This document shows positions 26,556-61,432 of a stretch of 64,000 nucleotides of DNA, one piece after another (position 1 is the first letter of the stretch; the number at the start of each line of letters is the position of its first letter). The notes beneath the pieces are model-generated. The model worked only from the letters and a program-made list of their open reading frames with translations, was not told the DNA's origin and ran no database searches. This DNA is from Antechinus flavipes (Eukaryota), in the NCBI RefSeq assembly GCF_016432865.1, contig NC_067401.1:113460001-113524000 (forward strand). Reading direction: 5' to 3'. A program made the position numbers and the translations under genes.

Positions 26556-27587
26556 TATGTATGATACTAGCTAACATTTATAGAGTAAGGTTTTCAAAGT
26601 GTTTTACAAATATCATTTCATGTGATCTTTACAACAACCCTGGGAGGTGCTATTTTTTGTTGTTTAGTCATTTTCAGTCATGTCTGACTATGACAAAGAT
26701 GGCAAAGATGCTAAAATGGTTTGCCATTTCCTTCTCTAGTTTGTTTTACAGATAACGAAATGGAGACAAGCAGAAGTAAGTGACTGTCCCAGGTTCACAC
26801 AGCTAATAAGTTATCTGAGGCTGGATTTGAATTCTAGGTTCAGCTCAGCTTTCTATACATTGTGCATCTATGTGCCCCTACCTGTTAAAATATTCACTTT
26901 ACAGATGAAGGAACTGAGGTAGATAACAATAAAACAACTTGCTTAGAATTACATAGTTCATGCTTGAGTTGGGTTTTTAATTCAGGTCTTCCTGACTTTA
27001 AGTNNNNNNNNNNNNNNNNNNNNNNNNNNNNNNNNNNNNNNNNNNNNNNNNNNNNNNNNNNNNNNNNNNNNNNNNNNNNNNNNNNNNNNNNNNNNNNNNN
27101 NNNNNNNNNNNNNNNNNNNNNNNNNNNNNNNNNNNTATGTATGATACTAGCTAACATTTATAGAGTAAGGTTTTCAAAGTGTTTTACAAATATCATTTCA
27201 TGTGATCTTTACAACAACCCTGGGAGGTGCTATTTTTTGTTGTTTAGTCATTTTCAGTCATGTCTGACTCTTTATGACAAAGATGGCAAAGATGCTAAAA
27301 TGGTTTGCCATTTCCTTCTCTAGTTTGTTTTACAGATAACGAAATGGAGACAAGCAGAAGTAAGTGACTGTCCCAGGTTCACACAGCTAATAAGTTATCT
27401 GAGGCTGGATTTGAATTCTAGGTTCAGCTCAGCTTTCTATACATTGTGCATCTATGTGCCCCTACCTGTTAAAATCTTCACTTTACAGAGGAAGGAACTG
27501 AGATAGATAACAATAAAACAACTTGCTTAGAATTACATAGTTCATGCTTGAGTTGGGTTTTTAATTCAGGTCTTCCTGACTTTAAGT
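26556..27587. repeat. Near-identical direct repeat (448 and 452 bp) on either side of an N gap
   Basis: 26556-27003 matches 27136-27587 except for one 4-bp indel and three substitutions. Confidence 0.95.
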
Positions 27588-39700: not shown

Positions 39701-41059
39701 AAAGAACAGAGAAGCATCTCAGAGTTGGAGGGGATTTAACATAGAGTCCAGTTATGCCCTTTGAGATGAGGAAACCCAGCACTGTGAAGGCAAAATAACT
39801 TGTCCAAGTTTGCATCACAAAGCCCAGCTCTGCTCATAGCTGTCTAACTACTTTCCCTGTTGCCTATTTCCTCCTCTCTGGGAATAGAGCCAAGCCCACC
39901 TTCTCCCTGCCCAGGCACATACCCCATTGCCCCATGATCACATATATTTGTGGGCTACAGGAGCCAGGCTTCCTGACTTGGACAAGTCTCAGTGACCAAA
40001 GGACTTGATCTTTCAGACTTTATCATGTGGTGACTTTCACCCCAATAAATGTGCACGTTGGACAGCGTCCTGGGAAGAAAAGCCCATTCCCGCCCACACA
40101 TCGTATTTGTATTCCTAGAAATCATTCATAGATTCATAAACCTGGACGGAGACTAAGAAATCATGATGCAATAGCCTCATTTAGAGGTAAGGAAACCAAG
40201 GCACAGATACACTTTAAGCTCCAACTATAACAAATGTAAATCCTACAATCTTACTATGCCCAGGACTGGAGAAGGAAATGGCAAACCATTCGTCTCCTCA
40301 AGAAAATCCCAATGGGTCACAATACTAGAACACCTCAGGGCATTAATGCTAGGTGCCAATTCAGTCATTAGTCAATTAACAAGCATTTACTAAGTCTGGT
40401 GGCACAGTGGATAAAGTAGTGGATCTGGAATCAGGACTAGCTCAATTCAGATCTGGCTTCCAGCATTAGCTATGTGGATAAGTTATTTAATACTCTTTGC
40501 CTCAGTTTCCTCATCTGCCAAATGAACCAGAGAAGAAAACGGCAAACCACTCCAGTATTTTGGCCAAGAAAACTCCAAATGGCATCATGAAAAGTTGGAT
40601 ATGATTGAAATAATTTAAGAATAATAATAAAGGAACCAATCATTGTGCTAAGTACTGAGGAAATAAAGAAAACCATCCCCCCCCCAAAAAAATGCAATCA
40701 TTGTTTTCAAGGAGCTCACAGACCATGGGAAGATAACATATAAGTAACTATGTACAAACAAGAAACTGCAGAGTAAATTAAAGGTGAATACACAGAGAAA
40801 AGGCTTACTTGTCAATAAATGTTTGATATGTATATCTATTTTATATACCCATATACCTGAGGTCATGTAAAAATTTCTTGAGTGAAAAGGGATTGTGAGA
40901 GCAAAAAGTTAAAAAGTCCTTCTTTAGACATCTTAAATGCAAGAAGCATAAAATGGAAGATATTTTCTTTCTCCTCAGGCCTTTCCCTCTTCCTAATTTT
41001 CCCATTATTCTATCAATTTTGTATCAGTATCAGTATCATATCGATACAGTAGCACTAGT

Positions 41060-52521: not shown

Positions 52522-53715
52522 TTACTGTTGTTTGAAGGGCCACTGAATGTGCTGCTGCTGCTGCTGCTGCTCCACAGGAGGAAAGTGCTCCTCTGGAATC
52601 TGTGGGACAAGCTCGGGCTCTTTGACAGGGATGGGAATTTCAGTACACCCTTGAGGTTCCTGTTGTGGTTCCAGCTGCTGCTGCTGCTGCTGCTGCTGCT
52701 CTTCCTTCTCCTCTAATTGCTGCTTTAGCTCCTCTTCTTTCTGCTCCAGCTGCTGCTCTAGCTGCTGCTCCAGCTGCTGCTCTAGCTGCTGCTCCAGTTG
52801 CTGCTCCAGTTGATTTTCCTTCTGCTCGAGCTGTTGTTCCAGCTGCTGTTCTTCCTTCTGCTCCAGCTGCTCTACTTTCTGATCCAGCTGTTGTTCCAGC
52901 TGTTCTTCTTTCTTTTCCAGCTGTTGCTCCAGTTGTTCTTCCTGCTGCACCAGCTGTTGCTCCAGCTGCTGCTCCTCTTTCTTTTCCAGCTGTTGCTCCA
53001 GCTGCTGCTCCTCTTTCTTTTCCAGCTGTTGCTCCAGCTGCTGCTCTTGCTTATGTTCTAGCTGCTGCTCCAGCTGCTCTTCTTTCTTTTCCAACTGTTG
53101 CTCTAGTTGTTCTTCTTGCTGCCCCAGCTGCTGCTCCTCTTTCTTTTCCAGCTGCTGCTCTTGCTTATGTTCCAGTTGCTGTTCTAACTGCTCCTCCAGC
53201 TGCTGCTCTTGCTTACTTTCCAGCTGTTGTTCCTGCTTACTTTCCAGCTGCTGCTCTTGCTTACTTTCCAGCTGTTGCTCTTGCTTACTTTCCAGTTGTT
53301 GTTCCTGCTTACTTTCCAGCTGTTGCTCCTGCTTACTTTCCAGCTGCTGCTCTTGCTTACTTTCCAGCTGTTGCTCCAGCTGCTGCTCTTGCTTATGTTC
53401 TGTCTGCAGCTCTTGCTTATGCTCCAGCTGCTCTTCTAGCTGCTGCTTTTGTCTATAGTCTGTCTGTTCCATTTGCTGCTCTCCTTTCTGCTCTTGCTGT
53501 GGAGTTAGAACAGGAACACATTTCACAGGAATTGTATGCTCTTCTTGCACATCTTGGACTTGCTCAGGCACTGGGCACGGTGCAGGTATTAGTGTGGGCT
53601 GCTTCACTTGTTCCTGTGGAACAGGGACAGGAATCTGGGGCAGGGGCTGCTTACACTGCTCCTGGCTGAAGGCAGGGGGAAGGCTCACAGGCTGTTTGTG
53701 CTGATAATCAGACAT
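52522..53715 (-). CDS. IVL: Involucrin (397 aa, single coding exon)
   Basis: Head has PVSLPPAFSQE and QEQVKQPT..PC. The centre is a Q/E/L/K tandem-repeat segment. The tail PVEQQQQQQHIQWPFKQQ resembles human PVEHQQQKQEVQWPPKHK (recalled). EDC gene structure and synteny with SPRR4 agree. Confidence 0.95.
   Translation of the reverse strand: MSDYQHKQPVSLPPAFSQEQCKQPLPQIPVPVPQEQVKQPTLIPAPCPVPEQVQDVQEEHTIPVKCVPVLTPQQEQKGEQQMEQTDYRQKQQLEEQLEHKQELQTEHKQEQQLEQQLESKQEQQLESKQEQQLESKQEQQLESKQEQQLESKQEQQLESKQEQQLESKQEQQLEEQLEQQLEHKQEQQLEKKEEQQLGQQEEQLEQQLEKKEEQLEQQLEHKQEQQLEQQLEKKEEQQLEQQLEKKEEQQLEQQLVQQEEQLEQQLEKKEEQLEQQLDQKVEQLEQKEEQQLEQQLEQKENQLEQQLEQQLEQQLEQQLEQQLEQKEEELKQQLEEKEEQQQQQQQQLEPQQEPQGCTEIPIPVKEPELVPQIPEEHFPPVEQQQQQQHIQWPFKQQ
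52675..52698 (-). repeat. (CAG)8 polyglutamine tract in IVL
   Basis: Eight uninterrupted ctg on the plus strand. A second (CAG)6 tract lies at 52552-52569. Confidence 0.95.
53200..53367 (-). repeat. Coding minisatellite, 7 x 24 bp, encoding (LESKQEQQ)7
   Basis: Seven consecutive units of consensus CTGGAAAGTAAGCARGARCARCAR counted directly. Confidence 0.97.
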
Positions 53716-55315
53716 CTTGTAGGTGATGTTAATTCTACCTAAAACAAAAAAAATTTAGTTACCACAAGAGCTCAAGAAGTTTGAAGGTTTGAAGTCAAGA
53801 ACAACAGGCAGCACTTGCTCTACTATTTTCCTGGCAATCAGGAGACCAATTGCTTAAGTTTAGCGTTGGGGTGGGAAAAGACTGTAGTTTGATGATAATC
53901 CTTATAGGCAGTATTAAGTTAGCATCTTGAGCCCTAGAAATTTTAAAACTTGCAGAAGCACTTTACATGTTATTTTATTTGATTCTTACCACAACCATCT
54001 GAGCTAGGTACTATTATTGTTCCCAGGGGAAAATGAAAGAGGTTAAGTGATTTGCCAGGGATTAAGCTATTAAGTATCTGTGGAGGCATTTGAACTCAAG
54101 TCTTTCTGATTCCAATTCTAGCACTTTATTCACTGTGCCCTATAGCTGTTCAACCCTTGGGGATTAAGTCTTTATCAACCACAGACTAGATCAACTCTAG
54201 GAGGTATGTGCAATTAGGGTTACATGACAGTTAGATTACTCCCCTCATCTTACATAAGATAATTTTCTTTTCCAAGGTCTCATTGGATACCGGCATTCTA
54301 TTCTAATTTATCTCTTTCCAATATAACACATTTTTGTAATTCAGTCATTTTTCAATTCTATCCAGCTATTCATGACCCGCATTGGGGTTTTCTTAGCAAA
54401 GATACCATAGTGGTTTGACATTTTCTTCTCTATCTCACTTTACAGAAAAAGATACTCAGGTAGAGTTAAGTGATTTGCTCAGGAATCACAAAGCTTATGA
54501 GGCCAGATTTGAACTCAATAAAAGAAGTCTTTCTGACTCCAGACCCAGCACTCTATAATTAACAGTATCTCAACCATTAAGAGTGGAATGAGAATATGAA
54601 GAAAAGTAAAGAAGGAAAAGGAGTCTACCCTGTGAGGTTCTTCCTTTCCTAAATTTGAAATACAGAATAAACCAATTTTCCACCCACTGAATGAGGTACA
54701 TTCAGTTTTGTGTGTGGAAAGTCAGTTCAATTTGCAGTCAAGGGTCTTGGGTCAGGATTCTGGCTCTGCAATTCACCTACCTTCTCTTTGACTCAGTTTC
54801 CTCATCTGTAAGATGGAAAGTTTCATTTAGATTACCTTTAAGATCCTATTCAGAACTAAATCTATGATCCTATCATATTAGAATGCTGATCTCCCACACT
54901 CCAAATTCTATTCCTGTAAAGAAATCATTGACAGTACAAGACACCTCTTCCCAGATGGGTTGGATGCAGGGCAAACTGGTCCCATCACCTCCTCCCATCT
55001 ACCTACCCCCATTATATGTTTCATTTCTAGTTAAATACATTATTTTAGATTGTGGTGCATTTTTGGATTATCTGTCCTATCCCTTCCCCTTTCTAAGCAC
55101 AGAGATAAAGATTCACAGGCTACGTGTACATTACTGAATTAGGGAAACATTTGGATACAGCTGGAATACATTCAGAACCTATTCAACCCATTCTTCCCCC
55201 CAATCACCAGCCAGGCTTCCCTGAGTTCTGTGGTCATGAAGTTGACCACAACGGAAGGAACACCACGTCAAAGGTGTTCAAAACAGGCCCCCAGGATCCA
55301 TTGGCTAAGACTTAC

Positions 55316-55363
55316 CAGTGTTCCCCAGAGGAAGCTGAATAGGAGGCTGCAGGAGTGTACAAT
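55316..55363 (-). other. IVL: Non-coding exon 1 of IVL (intron 55315-53739)
   Basis: TATAAA at 55392-55387 and Inr-like GCATT 29 nt downstream. Donor CACTG|GTAAGTCTTAG (GT at 55315-55314). Acceptor TTTTTTTTGTTTTAG|GTAG (AG at 53740-53739), 23 nt before the ATG. Confidence 0.85.
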
Positions 55364-55386: not shown

Positions 55387-55510
55387 TTTATAGCCCAACC
55401 TTCAACGTGTGGGGCACTGGAGCGGGATGGGGACTGACTGGTTTCACCACTCCGGGTTGGTCAACTTCCTCCAGTCCCTTCCTGACTCATACTCAAATCT
55501 GGTAGCAAAA
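55387..55510 (-). promoter_or_regulatory. IVL proximal promoter: TATA box, AP-1 site (AP1-1 equivalent), GRHL-like and C/EBP-like sites
   Basis: TATAAA 55392-55387; TGAGTCAGGAAGGG with AP-1 core at 55489-55483 (about -126/-120); AAACCAGT 55444-55437; TTTTGCTAC 55510-55502. Confidence 0.8.
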
Positions 55511-56539
55511 TCCCCTTGGGGGCTCTTTCTCCTAGGGACAGCTCCTATGCCACTGAAGCGTTTCTTCAGTGTGACACTCACCTGATGGGGCATCTTGCTA
55601 GGGTCTCTATTAGGTGAGGTATTTAGTCCTGGGATCCAGGGCCCTATTCCCTCTTCCCTTGTGACTGTAGCCATACCTCTTAATTTCCTCACCTGGAAAA
55701 TGGGCTGGCTGGGCCCCATTTCCCCTAGTGATTTTTGCTCTGCCTCTCCTCTGTACCTCCATTTCCTCATTTATAATGGGGGGGACAACATTTGCTGAAA
55801 TGTGAGATAAATCACAGGGTCTAAAGAAGAAAGGTACTTAGGAAGATCTGAGGATATGGGAGAAAAGGTAAAAGGGACAGAGCCCTTTACAAAGGAACAG
55901 GAAGAGGGAGCTGAAGTTTATCTTTGGACCCCCCAGTATGAAATGTGACTTCAGATTATAGAATGTTAGAAGCCATCTAGCTCAAACTCTGGCATAAGTA
56001 ATAAAACAAAATCTTATAAAAGTAATCTAGCTTTATATAAAGTCAAGGATATTTTCTTTTAAATTGGACAACGACTATGTCTCTAAAACCATCTAGGCAT
56101 TGTCTGGCATCCCATTCAAACAATGAAGCTGAAAGACCTAAAGGACCCTGTTTATATACACACTGATCACAGAGGTTGTTATTTGTCCTTCATTCTCAAA
56201 GAGGACCATGACATCAGGGAAGTGATGCTATGACATGCAAGTGAATTGGATTTAAGTGAGGGAGAGCAGTGCAAAGTTACCTGTCTCACTTTCCCCTCCA
56301 GAGCCATTTGGGTCCAGATGACAGATCAAGATGACAGTGCTATAGAGAGATGTGAGAAGTACATTGTGCTTCTCTCTTTTTCTTCGTTTAGAACATACAA
56401 TAAATATGGACATGTTGCAATGACAAGTAACTTGTTGCTGCTCCCATCTGGGGCAGATCCAATAAGGTTTCCCCGTTCTCCACAGTTTCTTCAATTTTTG
56501 CATCAAAGCTGTGGAACAAGAATTGCTGAAAAGTGATCC

Positions 56540-56870
56540 AAGACAACTCTGAAGGATTTAATGATGAAAAATGCTATTCATACCCAGAGAAAGAACTCAT
56601 TGTATCTGAATACAGATTGAAGCATATTTTTTCCCCTTCAGTTCATTTTTCTTGAGGGGTTTTTGGGGAGTGGGGTAAATTTATATTTTCTTTCACAACA
56701 TGAATTTTGGAAATGCTTTACATAATTTCACATGTGCCTTCTCAGTGGAGGAGAGGGAGAAAGAAAGAGAATCTGGAACTCAAAGTTTTAAAAAATAATG
56801 TTAAAAATTATTTTATATGTAACTAGGGAATGATAAAATATTAAATAATGAAAAAAGAATACCTGAAAAA
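56540..56870 (+). mobile_element. LINE-1 3' UTR fragment upstream of IVL
   Basis: atgatgaaaaatgcta...ccagagaaagaact...aatctggaactcaaagtttt with an A-rich end. Confidence 0.7.
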
Positions 56871-56939: not shown

Positions 56940-57940
56940 AATATCAATTACTTTGTCATTTAAATCTCTTCTGGTACCTGCCTACCTTCCTGGTCTTCTT
57001 AAACTCTATGTAGCTCCATTCTCTGAAATTCAATTACACTGGTTTAACGACACCTTTTCCCATTTCTGTGGGACAGCCTTTGTACTGTACTATCTGTCTA
57101 TGATGCCTGGGATTATCTCCCTCTTTACTTCTGCCTCAGTTTCCCTGGCTTCCATCAAAACAGCTTCAAGTCCATCTCCTACAGAATTCCTTTCCCTTCT
57201 CCACAGCTCTTGTAGCCTCTTCCCCCCGCCAAAAGTTACCTTATATCTCTTCTGTGTGTTTGTACACACATATACCTCATACGCACATATATGGGGTAGA
57301 GTGCACTTATTTGCTTTTTTTATGTCTTCCTCTCTAGAATTTAAGCCTCTAAACATCAGAGACTGTATTTGTCTATCTTCATATCTCCAGCACTTAGCAT
57401 AGTACCTGCCACATAGTAAGCAAATATAAATGCTTATTGTCTGACTGATGGAAATGTGTTCTTCAGAAAGGTTAATGAGATGGAAAAATCTCATCTCTCC
57501 CTCAACCATGAGCTTTTTTCTGAGACATGATACATGTTCCTTCAAGTGGCAGTTTCCAGCCTCCTTTTTCCCCAGCCTCCTTTCAACACAGATTTTTCTT
57601 AACTCCTCTCCCTCTTCTATTACTAGCTTTCTTTTCCCCCAACTTACCTCTTTCATATCAATACCCAAACTCATCCCACAGTCTTTGGGTACTACCTTCT
57701 TTATATACCCTCCTTTCCTCTCCCCCTGCTTTATCTTCCTCACCTCCTATATTCCATGCTGATATCCTTTCATTGTAGCCTATCTTCTCTTTCCTAGCTT
57801 TTCTCTGGGATCCAAGGCTGACATAAATCTTACTGAGTTCAAAGCAGGGGAGCAAGGGAGGAAAGAGGAGCTTTTGACCTTCTAAATTTGGAAATAAACA
57901 GTCCATCCCTATCTCATCCATGTTTTATCTCTCCCCCTGT
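56940..57940 (+). mobile_element. LINE-2 fragments upstream of IVL
   Basis: Pyrimidine-rich L2 body and L2 3' end (cacttagcatagtacctgccacatagtaag...aaatgcttatt). Confidence 0.6.
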
Positions 57941-58349
57941 CCCTTTTGCCTACACCAAAACGCCAATAATTCTTCCTAAGGGAAGGGAGAGTCAGAGGAG
58001 CCAGACCCCCATCTTAATGCCATACAGCATTCCTTTTCACCTAATACAATGACCCAGTTTTAAAGAGGGGTGAGGAAAGGAGAGAGATAGAGACAGAGAG
58101 AGCAGAAGGACCATCTATGGGATGAGAAAAAAAATCCAGGACTTAAGGTGGTGACAGTGGGGGTGATGTCAGAGCACTGAATATTCCCATCCAAAATAAT
58201 ACAACTCAAAGAAGCCCAGAAACTGGGATCCTCCAAAGAACCTGGGTTGCCTCATCTGCATGCATAATGCCCTGTCCCTTTTACCTCTGAATGCTGAGCT
58301 CACAGGTGAAATATGGCCCTAGCAACTCCATGACAGCCAAGAGGAGTTG

Positions 58350-58520
58350 GCAGCTGTCAAGAGGAAGTCACACCGGTCGAATGGGTTTCTTGGGCCGGGG
58401 TATCTGAGAGATGAATGCCCTGTGATTCACAGCATAATGAGGGCCCTGAGGGGAGTGTGGCTGTGTGAGTATTTGATCATTCCAGGAAAATCAAGAAGAA
58501 CAGGTGGGGGTGGGGCGGGG
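58350..58520 (-). promoter_or_regulatory. Candidate homolog of the IVL distal regulatory region (DRR, AP1-5 module)
   Basis: Minus strand reads CTCACACAGCCACACTCCCTCAGGGCCCTCATTATGCTGTGAATCACAGGGCAT...CAGATAC, resembling the recalled human DRR context (TTATTATGCCGTGAGTCAGAGGGCGG). Also a GC box at 58512-58520, an ETS core at 58362-58368 and an E-box at 58351-58356. Confidence 0.6.
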
Positions 58521-61432
58521 AAGAGGATGGAGGAGAAGATGGAGCAGAGTGAGAGAGAAGATGAAATTAGAAAATCCAAGTATAACTAGAAAAATCACAC
58601 CCCAGATTCTGCTTTCAGGGCTCCCCATTTCTCTGGTTGCCCTTTGAGGGAACCACTCTTGAGTGGGTTAATCTTAAATTAGCCTCACCTGCCTTAGGGT
58701 TGACCTCACAGGTCTACAAATTCACATGATGAGTGTAACTGTCCAGCCCCCACCCTGGATCACTAAGATGAACTCACACCTCATGACACCTAAGACTTCT
58801 GTGATCTTCTCCCCTGTTATCCCAGAGTATCTGTGTTAATATTAGGTCTCAGCCTGGTTCAGGAGCCCAAGGAGGTCATTGGCAGTTGCTTTTCTGGAAC
58901 AGGAGATTTATTGGTTTCTATCTGTAGTGAGCATTTTGGGGTCTGATATTTAGGAAGGAAAAGAGGGAAAGCACCTAAGTATCAGACCTCATAACTTCCT
59001 TCCACCTCTGGTCAAGTTTAGAGTCAGACTTTGGGTTAGGTTTGAGGAGTGGGAAGGGGAAGGGCAGGGAGAAAAGAGGGGAGGCAGGGACAGCTTTCAA
59101 CATGTTCTCACCATCCAGATATGCTGACGCCCACAGCTCCTTCTGAGAAGACATCAAATTTGGCCCAACCCTGGGCTTGTTCCTCGATAAAGGCTGCTCT
59201 CTCACCTAAATCTCACTTGCCTCCTCTATTCATGGGTCTCACTAGGGTCCAAGGACAAGGACAGAGAAAGGAGAGAAAAGATCCAAAAACTATTGTCAGA
59301 CTGATAGTGAAAATTTAGAGAATCCACTCCAAATGTTGTCATAGATTATTTGTGCCCAACCTGTGTGTGATCAGCCACAGTCAGACACGGATGCACTATA
59401 ATTTAACCCTAACATAGTGATATCATTTTGATCCCTTCTGAGAACAGGATAACAAGTATTAAGCCCCTTCACCGTGCAGACTATGCTACCATTTGCTCCA
59501 CATGCAGAGTCTGAGTCACACGTGGTCCAGTCCTTTGGGGAGTTCATCATCTAGTTAGGGTACTTGCACTAAGTATAATCTATAATATGATACCGGGGTT
59601 AGCAAGTTACCAAACAAAACGATAGCTGGATTTCAAGGGGAAAGGACAGGGAAAGGGCATGCTAGTAAATGTTTTAACAGTGGGCTCTCTGACTTACTCT
59701 CAAAAAATGTGCCCACAACACACTTTTTAGTTTAATCTGCAACAACAACATTTTCTCCATCATTAGTCTAGACAATCAACAGCAAAATAAACAAAGCAAG
59801 CCCTGATTTGTAATTTGCTGATTTTTGAGATATAGATATTCATGGAGAAAGTTTGAGCTGGTCCCAGAAAACTTTGAAAGAGAATGGGAGTAAGGGGGAA
59901 GGGGGAAAGAGAACCACTCTGAGGGATCCAAACAAGAAAACCTAGTGCTTCAGTCTTCCCTATCCCCAACTGAGCTTGCTTCCTTGGCCTGTTACATTAT
60001 TGGCTTTCCTTCCCTTCTTCCTTCTTCCTGCCACCTTCATTTTCTTTGTCTTTCAGTGACTCACTTTCATTCTCTAATCCTGGCTTTCCCAAGTGCTAGG
60101 TCAGCAAGGACAGAGTGAACCTCCGACCTCTATAGTGGATGTAGAAAGAAGTAGAGAGCAGGAGCCTTCTCTAGGCTGGGTGTGTGGTATGGAGGGCATG
60201 AGGAATGAAGTAGGAAGTCAGGAAATGGGGGAAATCGGAGGTTTCCTGAGTGCAGTTCCAAACCTGACCTTCTGATGGACTCTTGGATGGGATTAACATT
60301 CTCTCTCTCATATTTGTACTCAATCATCTGCTAGTTCTCCTNNNNNNNNNNNNNNNNNNNNNNNNNNNNNNNNNNNNNNNNNNNNNNNNNNNNNNNNNNN
60401 NNNNNNNNNNNNNNNNNNNNNNNNNNNNNNNNNNNNNNNNNNNNNNNNNNNNNNNNNNNNNNNNNNNNNNNNNNNNTGTCTGAGATCACATTTGAACTTA
60501 GATCCTCCTGATTTCAGGGTTGGTACTCTATCCACTGCATCACCTACTTGCCCCCTTAATCTTTTTTTCTTCCTAAAACCCTACAGTTGGATCTTAATTC
60601 TGGACCTTAAATAAGGAACTTTTAAGATCACCAATCCATGTTTCAACACTCCACTCACCCAGCCCACTCCAGTTTGTAAGTGAGAAAATGAGCTACAAAG
60701 AAGCAAAATGACTTACCCACAATCACACTGTTAGTTTGTAGTAAAAAGCTGTAATTCAGAACCCTTGTCTTGCAAATAAATGTTTCCCACTAACAGTGCT
60801 AATAATAGCATTTATATTCATACTTTAAGATTTATAAAATGTTTTACAAATATTATCTTATTTAATCCTCAAAACAACAGGATGTAGATGCTATTATTAT
60901 CCCTATTATGCAGAAAGCTAAGGTGATTCAAACACAGGTCCTCCTGACTCCAGACCCAGAGCTCTACTGAGCAACCCAGCTGTTTCTCCTAATGTCAAAG
61001 AATCTAATTTTGGGAACAAATGAAAAAAAAATTAAATAGTTACCATGTTCCTAACACTGTGTTAAGTGATGGAAATATAGATACATAAAGAAGGACTTCT
61101 TGTGCTCAAGGAGCTTCCATTCTAATAAGGAAAGACTACACACGTGAGGGAGTGATGGCGGGTGATAAGTGTTTTAGACTGGGAAGTCACAGGAGTGGTG
61201 ACTGGTGAGTGCAGTCACACGGCAAATGATTGATATGCTCTGAAAAGATTAAAATTGATCCTATATAATTTTCTTATTGATTTTATTTATAATTAATTGA
61301 TTTTGTCCTATAATTGCTTAAGTCTGAGATATTTGTCTCTGAATTTAGTTCAGAATCCAGCTGTCTTTAGAAATCCAGTTCTCCAGCTAATCACACTGTT
61401 CTGTTCTTACTTCAAGAAAATCTTGGGGATTT

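What the first reader, a model, noticed from the sequence alone, without database searches (positions are those of the whole stretch)
58350..58520. Homolog of the IVL distal regulatory region with a rewired AP-1/Sp1 core
Seen: at about -3.06 kb the minus strand reads CTCATTATGCTGTGAATCACAGGGCATTC, with a perfect 13-bp odd palindrome CTGTGA-A-TCACAG (58420-58432). A GC box (GGGGCGGGG, 58512-58520), an ETS core, an E-box and several CpGs lie nearby. From recall, the human DRR reads CTTATTATGCCGTGAGTCAGAGGGCGG at about -2.12 kb, and its AP1-5 and Sp1 sites are needed for epidermal expression. The flanks match, but here TGAGTCA is TGAATCA and GGGCGG is GGGCAT. Inference: same enhancer, weaker AP-1 variant, and Sp1 site displaced about 80 bp (binding-site turnover). 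The marsupial SINE and L1 at 56176-56870 account for most of the extra distance. It may overlap or neighbour the conserved EDC enhancer described near IVL (CNE 923).
Basis: partly seen in the sequence, partly recalled or inferred. Interest (0 to 1): 0.7.

Follow-up and report, generated by a model that had tools for sequence, protein, structure and literature searches.

The report
Marsupial copy of involucrin upstream enhancer
About 3 kb upstream of a marsupial involucrin gene lies the counterpart of the known human skin enhancer (the involucrin distal regulatory region, also called enhancer 923), but the two binding sites that human experiments call essential are changed here, an expected kind of regulatory drift, not a new mechanism.

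Summary

Homology to the human IVL distal regulatory region (DRR) is well supported:
- Two independent published human DRR oligos each have their best match in the whole 64-kb window here (58445-58408 and 58391-58368, minus strand).
- The matches are collinear, face IVL, and keep near-human spacing (61 versus 67 bp).
- Shuffled oligos never reach these scores, and seven other human IVL-upstream primers match nothing.
- The downstream gene is involucrin (Pfam Involucrin_N on the N-terminus; short non-coding exon 1 plus one coding exon).

By published coordinates, the human AP1-5 site lies inside enhancer 923. The DRR and 923 are therefore one element, already reported as conserved across mammals.

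The altered core is a fact of sequence: TGAATCA replaces TGAGTCA, and GGGCATT replaces the abutting GC box. The window's only GT/GC-box pair lies about 80-90 bp distal.

Not tested here: weaker AP-1 binding, Sp1 "displacement", and which lineage changed. The 13-bp palindrome alone is at chance level.

Verdict: orthologue of a known enhancer with a variant core; modest interest.

The parts
58368..58445 (-). Conserved core of the IVL distal regulatory region / enhancer 923 homologue. It comprises two blocks that match published human DRR oligos.
   Evidence: Block 1 (58445-58408) matches the AP1-5 probe core at 25/38, and 24/29 over its left part; score 19 against a next best of 12. Block 2 (58391-58368) matches the reverse complement of the -2055 ChIP primer at 18/24; score 16 against a next best of 11. 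Of 400 shuffled oligos, none reaches either score.
58423..58429 (-). AP-1 (TRE)-like heptamer TGAATCA, at the position of the human AP1-5 site TGAGTCA. The central base is G in human and A here.
   Evidence: Alignment; human probe.
58420..58432 (.). Perfect 13-bp odd palindrome CTGTGA-A-TCACAG centred on the heptamer.
   Evidence: It is not significant alone: 30 such palindromes occur in the window against about 18 expected.
58414..58420 (-). Position of the human Sp1 GC box (GGGCGGG). It reads GGGCATT here, so there is no GC box.
   Evidence: Alignment.
58368..58378 (-). The 11-mer GACCGGTGTGA, identical to human. It contains the window's only ACCGGT and a retained CpG. It resembles a GRHL-type AACCGGTT core and a T-box-like GGTGTGA; both readings are inference.
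   Evidence: The window's CpG observed/expected ratio is only 0.09.
58362..58368 (+). ETS core AGGAAGT abutting the conserved 11-mer.
   Evidence: The motif occurs 21 times in the window, so it is not significant alone.
58351..58356 (.). E-box CAGCTG, overlapping a TGACAG/CTGTCA inverted pair (58331-58336 and 58354-58359).
   Evidence: These are common motifs (38 and 33 copies in the window).
58507..58520 (+). Tandem GT box and GC box (GGGGTGGGGCGGGG), the only Sp/KLF-type G-boxes in 64 kb. It lies about 80-90 bp distal to the heptamer, at the edge of a purine-rich tract.
   Evidence: GGGG[CT]GGGG occurs twice in total, both copies here; the window has one GGGCGG and one CCGCCC (at 40090).
55387..55392 (-). 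TATAAA box of the IVL promoter. The TSS is inferred at about 55362.
   Evidence: Read from the sequence only; no RNA evidence.
55483..55489 (-). Canonical proximal TRE TGAGTCA followed by GGAAGGG, at about -121 to -127. From recall, it resembles the human AP1-1 site with its ETS element.
55316..55362 (-). Inferred non-coding exon 1 of IVL, with donor CACTG|GTAAGT.
   Evidence: Inferred from TATA spacing and the splice consensus.
52522..53738 (-). IVL exon 2, with an acceptor AG at 53740-53739. The CDS is 53715-52522 and encodes a 397-aa Q/E-rich repeat protein.
   Evidence: The N-terminal 100 aa match Pfam Involucrin_N PF10583 at E 1.3e-5 and 26 bits (cut-off 27), residues 1-64.

Best explanation
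The segment at about 58368-58445 (minus strand, same orientation as the gene) is the marsupial orthologue of the core of the human involucrin distal regulatory region. By published coordinates, that human region is the same element as epidermal enhancer/CNE 923. The record is GCA_016432865.2, which I recall as Antechinus flavipes. The most likely function is a differentiation-dependent keratinocyte enhancer acting on the IVL promoter 3.07 kb downstream. That promoter keeps a canonical TGAGTCA+GGAAGGG element at about -125. In this species the enhancer core differs from human at the two sites shown to matter in human. The TRE has A instead of G at its centre (TGAATCA), and the abutting Sp1 GC box is absent. 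The strongly conserved parts are the flanks: ATTATGC(T/C)GTGA, AACCCAT and GACCGGTGTGA. I infer that activity here rests on a lower-affinity AP-1 site helped by neighbouring factors. Candidates are the ETS core, the ACCGGT/GRHL-like site, and the unique GT/GC-box pair about 80-90 bp distal for Sp1/KLF. Canonical TREs further upstream (59512, 60057) may also contribute. What is shown: sequence homology, position, orientation, and the base differences. What is inferred: enhancer activity, factor binding, compensation, and the direction of evolutionary change.
For: - Published human AP1-5 probe and -2218/-2055 ChIP primers.
- The probe core's best ungapped hit over both strands of the window is 58445-58408, score 19 (24/29 over the left part), next best 12. 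The reverse primer's best hit is 58391-58368, score 16 (18/24), next best 11.
- Shuffled-oligo maxima are 11.6 +/- 1.1 and 10.9 +/- 1.05, with 0 of 400 reaching the observed scores.
- A tail fit expects 2e-4 and 1.3e-3 such hits per 128 kb. Both fall within 80 bp, on the same strand, in the human order, with 61 versus 67 bp spacing.
- Seven other published human primers from the IVL upstream region score only 10-13, at scattered places.
- The gene downstream is involucrin.
- The stretch has no other copy in the window, so it is not a dispersed repeat, and it has no credible ORF.
- Human enhancer 923 is at hg19 152,877,349-152,879,610 and the CNE at 152,878,419-152,879,075. It is described as upstream of IVL, and its mouse deletion lowers Ivl in cis.
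- Promoter and first-intron SNP positions bracket the TSS between 152,880,672 and 152,881,746, which puts AP1-5 (-2122) inside 923.
- AP-1 (JunB, JunD, Fra-1), Sp1 and C/EBP drive the human promoter.
- ACCGGT and the G-box pair are unique in 64 kb.
Against: - Only 62 nt of human sequence, from two oligos, could be compared. They come from the methods section of a retracted paper, although the probe is attributed there to Banks et al. 1998.
- No contiguous human, mouse or other marsupial sequence was available, so block limits, depth of conservation and the polarity of the changes are unknown.
- The forward ChIP primer (-2218) has no match.
- The two human-essential sites are precisely the ones not conserved, so the element may have lost AP-1/Sp1 input or even lost its activity.
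- A single-base assembly error or polymorphism at the central A cannot be excluded.
Confidence: 0.75

Rival explanations
1. The sequence is homologous, but the AP-1/Sp1 module is not ancestral. On this reading the constrained therian core is the flanks (the ATTATGC block and AACCCAT..GACCGGTGTGA, with a GRHL-like or ETS reading), and the canonical TGAGTCA+GC box is a placental or primate gain. The marsupial enhancer would then work without direct AP-1/Sp1 input at this spot.
For: The best-conserved runs are the flanks, including an 11/11 match that holds a CpG in a genome with CpG o/e of 0.09. ACCGGT is unique in the window. The two 'essential' human sites are exactly the ones that differ.
Against: Six of the seven heptamer bases are kept, and the flanks make it a perfect palindrome, which suggests continued bZIP-type use. 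Enhancer 923 is reported as c-Jun/AP-1-dependent, with conservation across mammals. No outgroup was available to polarise the change.
Confidence: 0.15
2. This is a decayed relic. The homology is real, but the enhancer has lost function in this lineage, and IVL is driven by the proximal promoter and other elements such as the canonical TREs at 59512 and 60057.
For: Both sites reported as required for expression in human transgenes are altered. Canonical TREs exist at 55483 (proximal), 59512 and 60057.
Against: About 80% identity over short blocks, with an intact CpG-bearing 11-mer after the long marsupial-placental separation, is hard to keep without constraint. Flanking human primers from less critical positions have no match at all.
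Confidence: 0.07
3. The resemblance to the human DRR is chance, produced by a common AP-1-like motif.
For: AP-1-like heptamers and 13-bp palindromes are frequent: 9-10 TGA[AT]TCA per strand and 30 palindromes in the window.
Against: Two independent oligos match collinearly. The joint expectation is far below 1e-6, and the negative controls are clean.
Confidence: 0.02

Closest known systems
Human involucrin distal regulatory region (DRR, -2473/-1953) with the AP1-5 and adjacent Sp1 sites (Eckert laboratory)
   Same: It lies upstream of IVL in the same orientation. There is 24/29 identity around the AP-1 position and 18/24 (11/11 at the 3' end) about 60 bp proximal, with the same order and spacing. 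The gene also keeps a canonical proximal TRE.
   Different: The heptamer is TGAATCA, not TGAGTCA. The abutting GC box is missing. The nearest GC/GT boxes are about 80-90 bp away on the distal side. The element sits at -3.07 kb instead of -2.12 kb. No binding or activity data exist for this species.
Epidermal enhancer / conserved non-coding element 923 of the epidermal differentiation complex (de Guzman Strong 2010; Oh 2014; Mathyer 2021)
   Same: By the coordinates in Mathyer 2021 and its supplement, the human AP1-5 site falls inside 923, so this is the same element. 923 is described as conserved across mammalian phylogeny, associated with c-Jun/AP-1, and needed in cis for mouse Ivl expression.
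   Different: The identity of the DRR with 923 is my coordinate inference; I did not find it stated in the papers I could read. The original 923 papers were not held, so I could not check whether marsupials were in the alignment that defined the CNE. I recall that opossum was included.

Membership tests
IVL DRR / enhancer 923 orthologues | Lies a few kb upstream of the involucrin gene, on the gene's strand order | tested here: met
   The core is at 58368-58445. The IVL TATA box is at 55392-55387 and the CDS at 53715-52522 on the minus strand. The gene is identified by Involucrin_N, E 1.3e-5.
IVL DRR / enhancer 923 orthologues | Sequence homology to the human DRR core | tested here: met
   Two published oligos have collinear best hits, with scores 19 and 16 against null maxima of 15 and 14 in 400 shuffles. 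The negative controls score 10-13. Only 62 nt of human sequence were compared.
IVL DRR / enhancer 923 orthologues | Canonical AP-1 site TGAGTCA (AP1-5) | tested here: not met
   The heptamer at 58429-58423 (minus strand) is TGAATCA.
IVL DRR / enhancer 923 orthologues | Sp1 GC box abutting the AP-1 site | tested here: not met
   The position reads GGGCATT at 58420-58414. The only G-boxes are at 58507-58520.
IVL DRR / enhancer 923 orthologues | JUN/FOS and Sp1 occupancy, DNase hypersensitivity or H3K27ac, and epidermis-specific enhancer activity | not testable with these tools
IVL DRR / enhancer 923 orthologues | Conservation across other mammals at this block | not testable with these tools
   No route to other mammalian loci worked. 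The available collections hold no mammalian genomes apart from an exact-protein look-up.

The most novel reading that the evidence does not exclude
The deeply conserved heart of the involucrin/923 enhancer may not be the AP-1/Sp1 pair that human transgene work made famous. It may instead be the flanking blocks: the ATTATGC box and the CpG-bearing GACCGGTGTGA, with a GRHL-like or ETS reading. A marsupial would then run the enhancer with a non-canonical palindromic TGAATCA and a relocated Sp/KLF box. That would make it a natural experiment in how an 'essential' composite site can be replaced.
Probability: 0.15. Interest if true: 0.5.

Novelty: new member of a known kind. Interest (0 to 1): 0.3.

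Why it matters
The finding anchors the marsupial IVL regulatory landscape to one of the best-studied epidermal enhancers. It also shows, at base resolution, that the two sites reported as indispensable in human are not the most conserved bases. That gives a concrete pair of natural variants (TGAGTCA versus TGAATCA, abutting versus distal GC box) for swap experiments on enhancer grammar and binding-site turnover. It also makes explicit that the classical DRR and enhancer 923 are one element. None of this is unexpected: 923 was defined by mammalian conservation, and motif turnover inside conserved enhancers is common.

Tried and rejected
- Routes to orthologous loci all failed. The word search with IVL residues 1-80 and with the whole protein found nothing. 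The representative search with the N-terminal 90 aa gave 0 hits. The cluster look-up did not hold the protein. The exact-protein look-up returned only this genome's own record.
The later motif and alignment work was done locally in scripts.
- Papers not held: de Guzman Strong 2010, Oh 2014, Banks 1998 and Vanhoutteghem 2008.
- A literature search for the human core string found only the one retracted paper. A search for the IVL TSS coordinate found nothing.
- Rejected readings: the palindrome as a signal in itself; 59512 as the better DRR match; a dispersed repeat; a coding exon.
- No human contig was fetched or compared. Only short published oligos were used.

Full report
**What is there**

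- The minus strand reads CTCATTATGCTGTGAATCACAGGGCATTC.
- The 13-bp odd palindrome is at 58420-58432.
- GGGGCGGGG is at 58512-58520, AGGAAGT at 58362-58368 and CAGCTG at 58351-58356.
- Four CpGs lie at 58374-58516, in a window whose CpG observed/expected ratio is 0.09.

The palindrome is not remarkable in itself. The window contains 30 perfect odd palindromes with arms of 6 or more, against about 18 expected.

**The gene**

A 397-aa Q/E-rich repeat ORF lies at 53715-52522 on the minus strand. It is preceded by:
- an AG acceptor at 53740-53739;
- an intron of about 1.58 kb;
- a donor CACTG|GTAAGT at 55316/55315;
- a TATAAA box at 55392-55387;
- a canonical TGAGTCA followed by GGAAGGG at 55489-55476.

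The full protein gives no Pfam hit. Its first 100 residues alone match Involucrin_N (PF10583) at E 1.3e-5 and 26 bits against a cut-off of 27, residues 1-64 on profile positions 1-67 of 69. The structure of a short non-coding exon 1 plus one coding exon is that of involucrin, by established knowledge. No RNA evidence was available, so the TSS (about 55362) and exon 1 are inferred. With that TSS, the heptamer starts at about -3067.

The window is GCA_016432865.2, CM028220.1, at about 113.5 Mb. I recall this assembly as Antechinus flavipes. That fits the use of that genome for epidermal differentiation complex work in PMC10791643, which also reports IVL as conserved across mammals.

**Test of homology**

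The methods section of PMC3359321 prints the hINV AP1-5 gel-shift probe and the ChIP primers for -2218/-2055. That paper is retracted, but the probe is attributed there to Banks et al. 1998.

I scanned both strands of the whole window with the linker-free probe core (38 nt) and the primers, using ungapped +1/-1 scoring.

| Human oligo | Best hit (minus strand) | Score | Identity | Next best | Shuffled-oligo maximum (400 shuffles) | Expected hits per 128 kb |
|---|---|---|---|---|---|---|
| AP1-5 probe core | 58445-58408 | 19 | 25/38 (24/29 over left part) | 12 | 11.6 +/- 1.1, none reaches 19 | 2e-4 |
| -2055 ChIP primer, reverse complement | 58391-58368 | 16 | 18/24 (last 11 of 11) | 11 | 10.9 +/- 1.05, none reaches 16 | 1.3e-3 |

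The two hits are on the same strand, in the human order, facing the gene. From the start of the heptamer to the primer end is 61 bp here and 67 bp in human. The joint expectation is therefore many orders of magnitude below one.

Seven other published human primers served as negative controls: the -2218 forward ChIP primer, the -1040/-919 control pair, and the IVL-promoter and 923 cloning primers. They score 10-13 at scattered, unrelated places.

The stretch has no second copy in the window and no credible ORF.

I conclude that 58368-58445 is orthologous to the human DRR core.

**What differs**

In the alignment, the human TGAGTCA is TGAATCA here, and the abutting GGGCGGG is GGGCATT. To the right of that point, similarity to the probe ends.

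Two of the five mismatches in the left block create the perfect palindrome: CCGTGA becomes CTGTGA, and TCAGAG becomes TCACAG.

The best-kept runs are the flanks:
- ATTATGC;
- GTGA.TCA;
- AGGGC;
- AACCCAT;
- GACCGGTGTGA.

The last of these holds the window's only ACCGGT and a retained CpG.

The only GGGG[CT]GGGG motifs in 64 kb are the tandem pair at 58507-58520. They lie about 80-90 bp from the heptamer on its distal side, at the edge of a purine-rich tract. The human Sp1 site abuts the proximal side. "Displaced Sp1 site" is therefore a reasonable but untested reading.

**Relation to enhancer 923**

Mathyer et al. 2021 (PMC8105351) give these hg19 chr1 coordinates:
- enhancer 923: 152,877,349-152,879,610;
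- CNE 923: 152,878,419-152,879,075.

They describe 923 as upstream of IVL, conserved across mammalian phylogeny, and associated with c-Jun/AP-1. Its deletion in mouse lowers Ivl in cis.

Their supplement places the promoter SNP rs1854779 at 152,880,672 and the first-intron SNPs at 152,881,746 and 152,881,802. The TSS lies between these positions, so AP1-5 at -2122 falls at 152,878,550-152,879,228. That is inside enhancer 923 and within or at the edge of the CNE. With the TSS I recall (152,881,021), the CNE spans -2602 to -1946, almost exactly the DRR (-2473/-1953).

The DRR and 923 are thus one element. Its presence in a marsupial is expected, not new. I could not read the original 923 papers. 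I recall that opossum was part of the alignment that defined these CNEs.

**Mechanism**

In human keratinocytes, JunB, JunD and Fra-1, together with Sp1 and C/EBP, drive the promoter through proximal and distal sites. The retracted source calls AP1-5 absolutely required in vivo.

By homology, the marsupial element is most likely a differentiation-dependent keratinocyte enhancer for IVL. It is established bZIP knowledge that the TRE centre prefers C/G, so TGAATCA should bind AP-1 less well. I did not test this.

Compensation could come from:
- the adjacent conserved blocks (a GRHL-like ACCGGT, the ETS AGGAAGT);
- the distal GT/GC boxes (Sp1/KLF);
- the canonical proximal TRE;
- the canonical TREs at 59512 and 60057.

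These are inferences. The direction of change is unknown, because no other mammalian sequence could be obtained.

**Side claim on distance**

The extra 0.95 kb relative to human is only partly explained. Within 56176-56870, only 56564-56633 and 56765-56856 have dispersed copies in the window. By eye, 56180-56400 and 57390-57440 look SINE/MIR-like. No repeat library was available, and MIR elements may predate the split.

Afterwards I sent no DNA letters of that stretch to any pattern, collection, paper or findings search, and worked on it only locally.
- No human contig was fetched. Only short published oligos were compared.
- The N runs (827 bases) were left alone.

**Verdict**

This is a correct observation and a correct homology call. 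The altered AP-1/Sp1 core is real at the sequence level and functionally untested. The element is an orthologue of a known, already conservation-defined enhancer, so it is of modest interest.

Noticed in passing
window 55476-55489 (minus strand): The proximal IVL promoter keeps a canonical TGAGTCA immediately followed by GGAAGGG at about -125. From recall, this resembles the human AP1-1 site with its ETS element. The proximal TRE is therefore canonical while the distal one is not.
   Followed up: partly
window 59505-59525: The canonical TRE at 59512 (TGAGTCA on the plus strand) directly abuts a CACGTG E-box (minus strand: CCACGTGTGACTCAG), at about -4.15 kb. It could be a further module of the same upstream regulatory region.
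   Followed up: no
window 52525-53715 (minus strand): Full-length involucrin gets no Pfam hit and no relatives in three protein searches. The N-terminal 100 aa alone hit Involucrin_N at E 1.3e-5. Composition filters hide this low-complexity protein, so blank results for such genes mean little.
   Followed up: yes
window 26689-26988 and 27273-27572: Two 300-nt copies at 99% identity lie 584 bp apart. This is a very recent local tandem duplication, or an assembly duplication.
   Followed up: no
window 55700-55790 and 57390-57440 (minus strand): By eye, these stretches resemble MIR-type SINEs (the 'TTACAGATGAGGAAACTGAGG' core and the 'CATTTAT..CTACTATGTGCCAGGCACTGTGCTAAG' head). They lie between the promoter and the enhancer core. 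No repeat library was available to confirm this.
   Followed up: partly
window 58500-58570 (plus strand): A purine-rich (GA/GGA) low-complexity tract lies directly distal to the GT/GC boxes. The G-boxes may have arisen from, or be maintained within, this tract.
   Followed up: no
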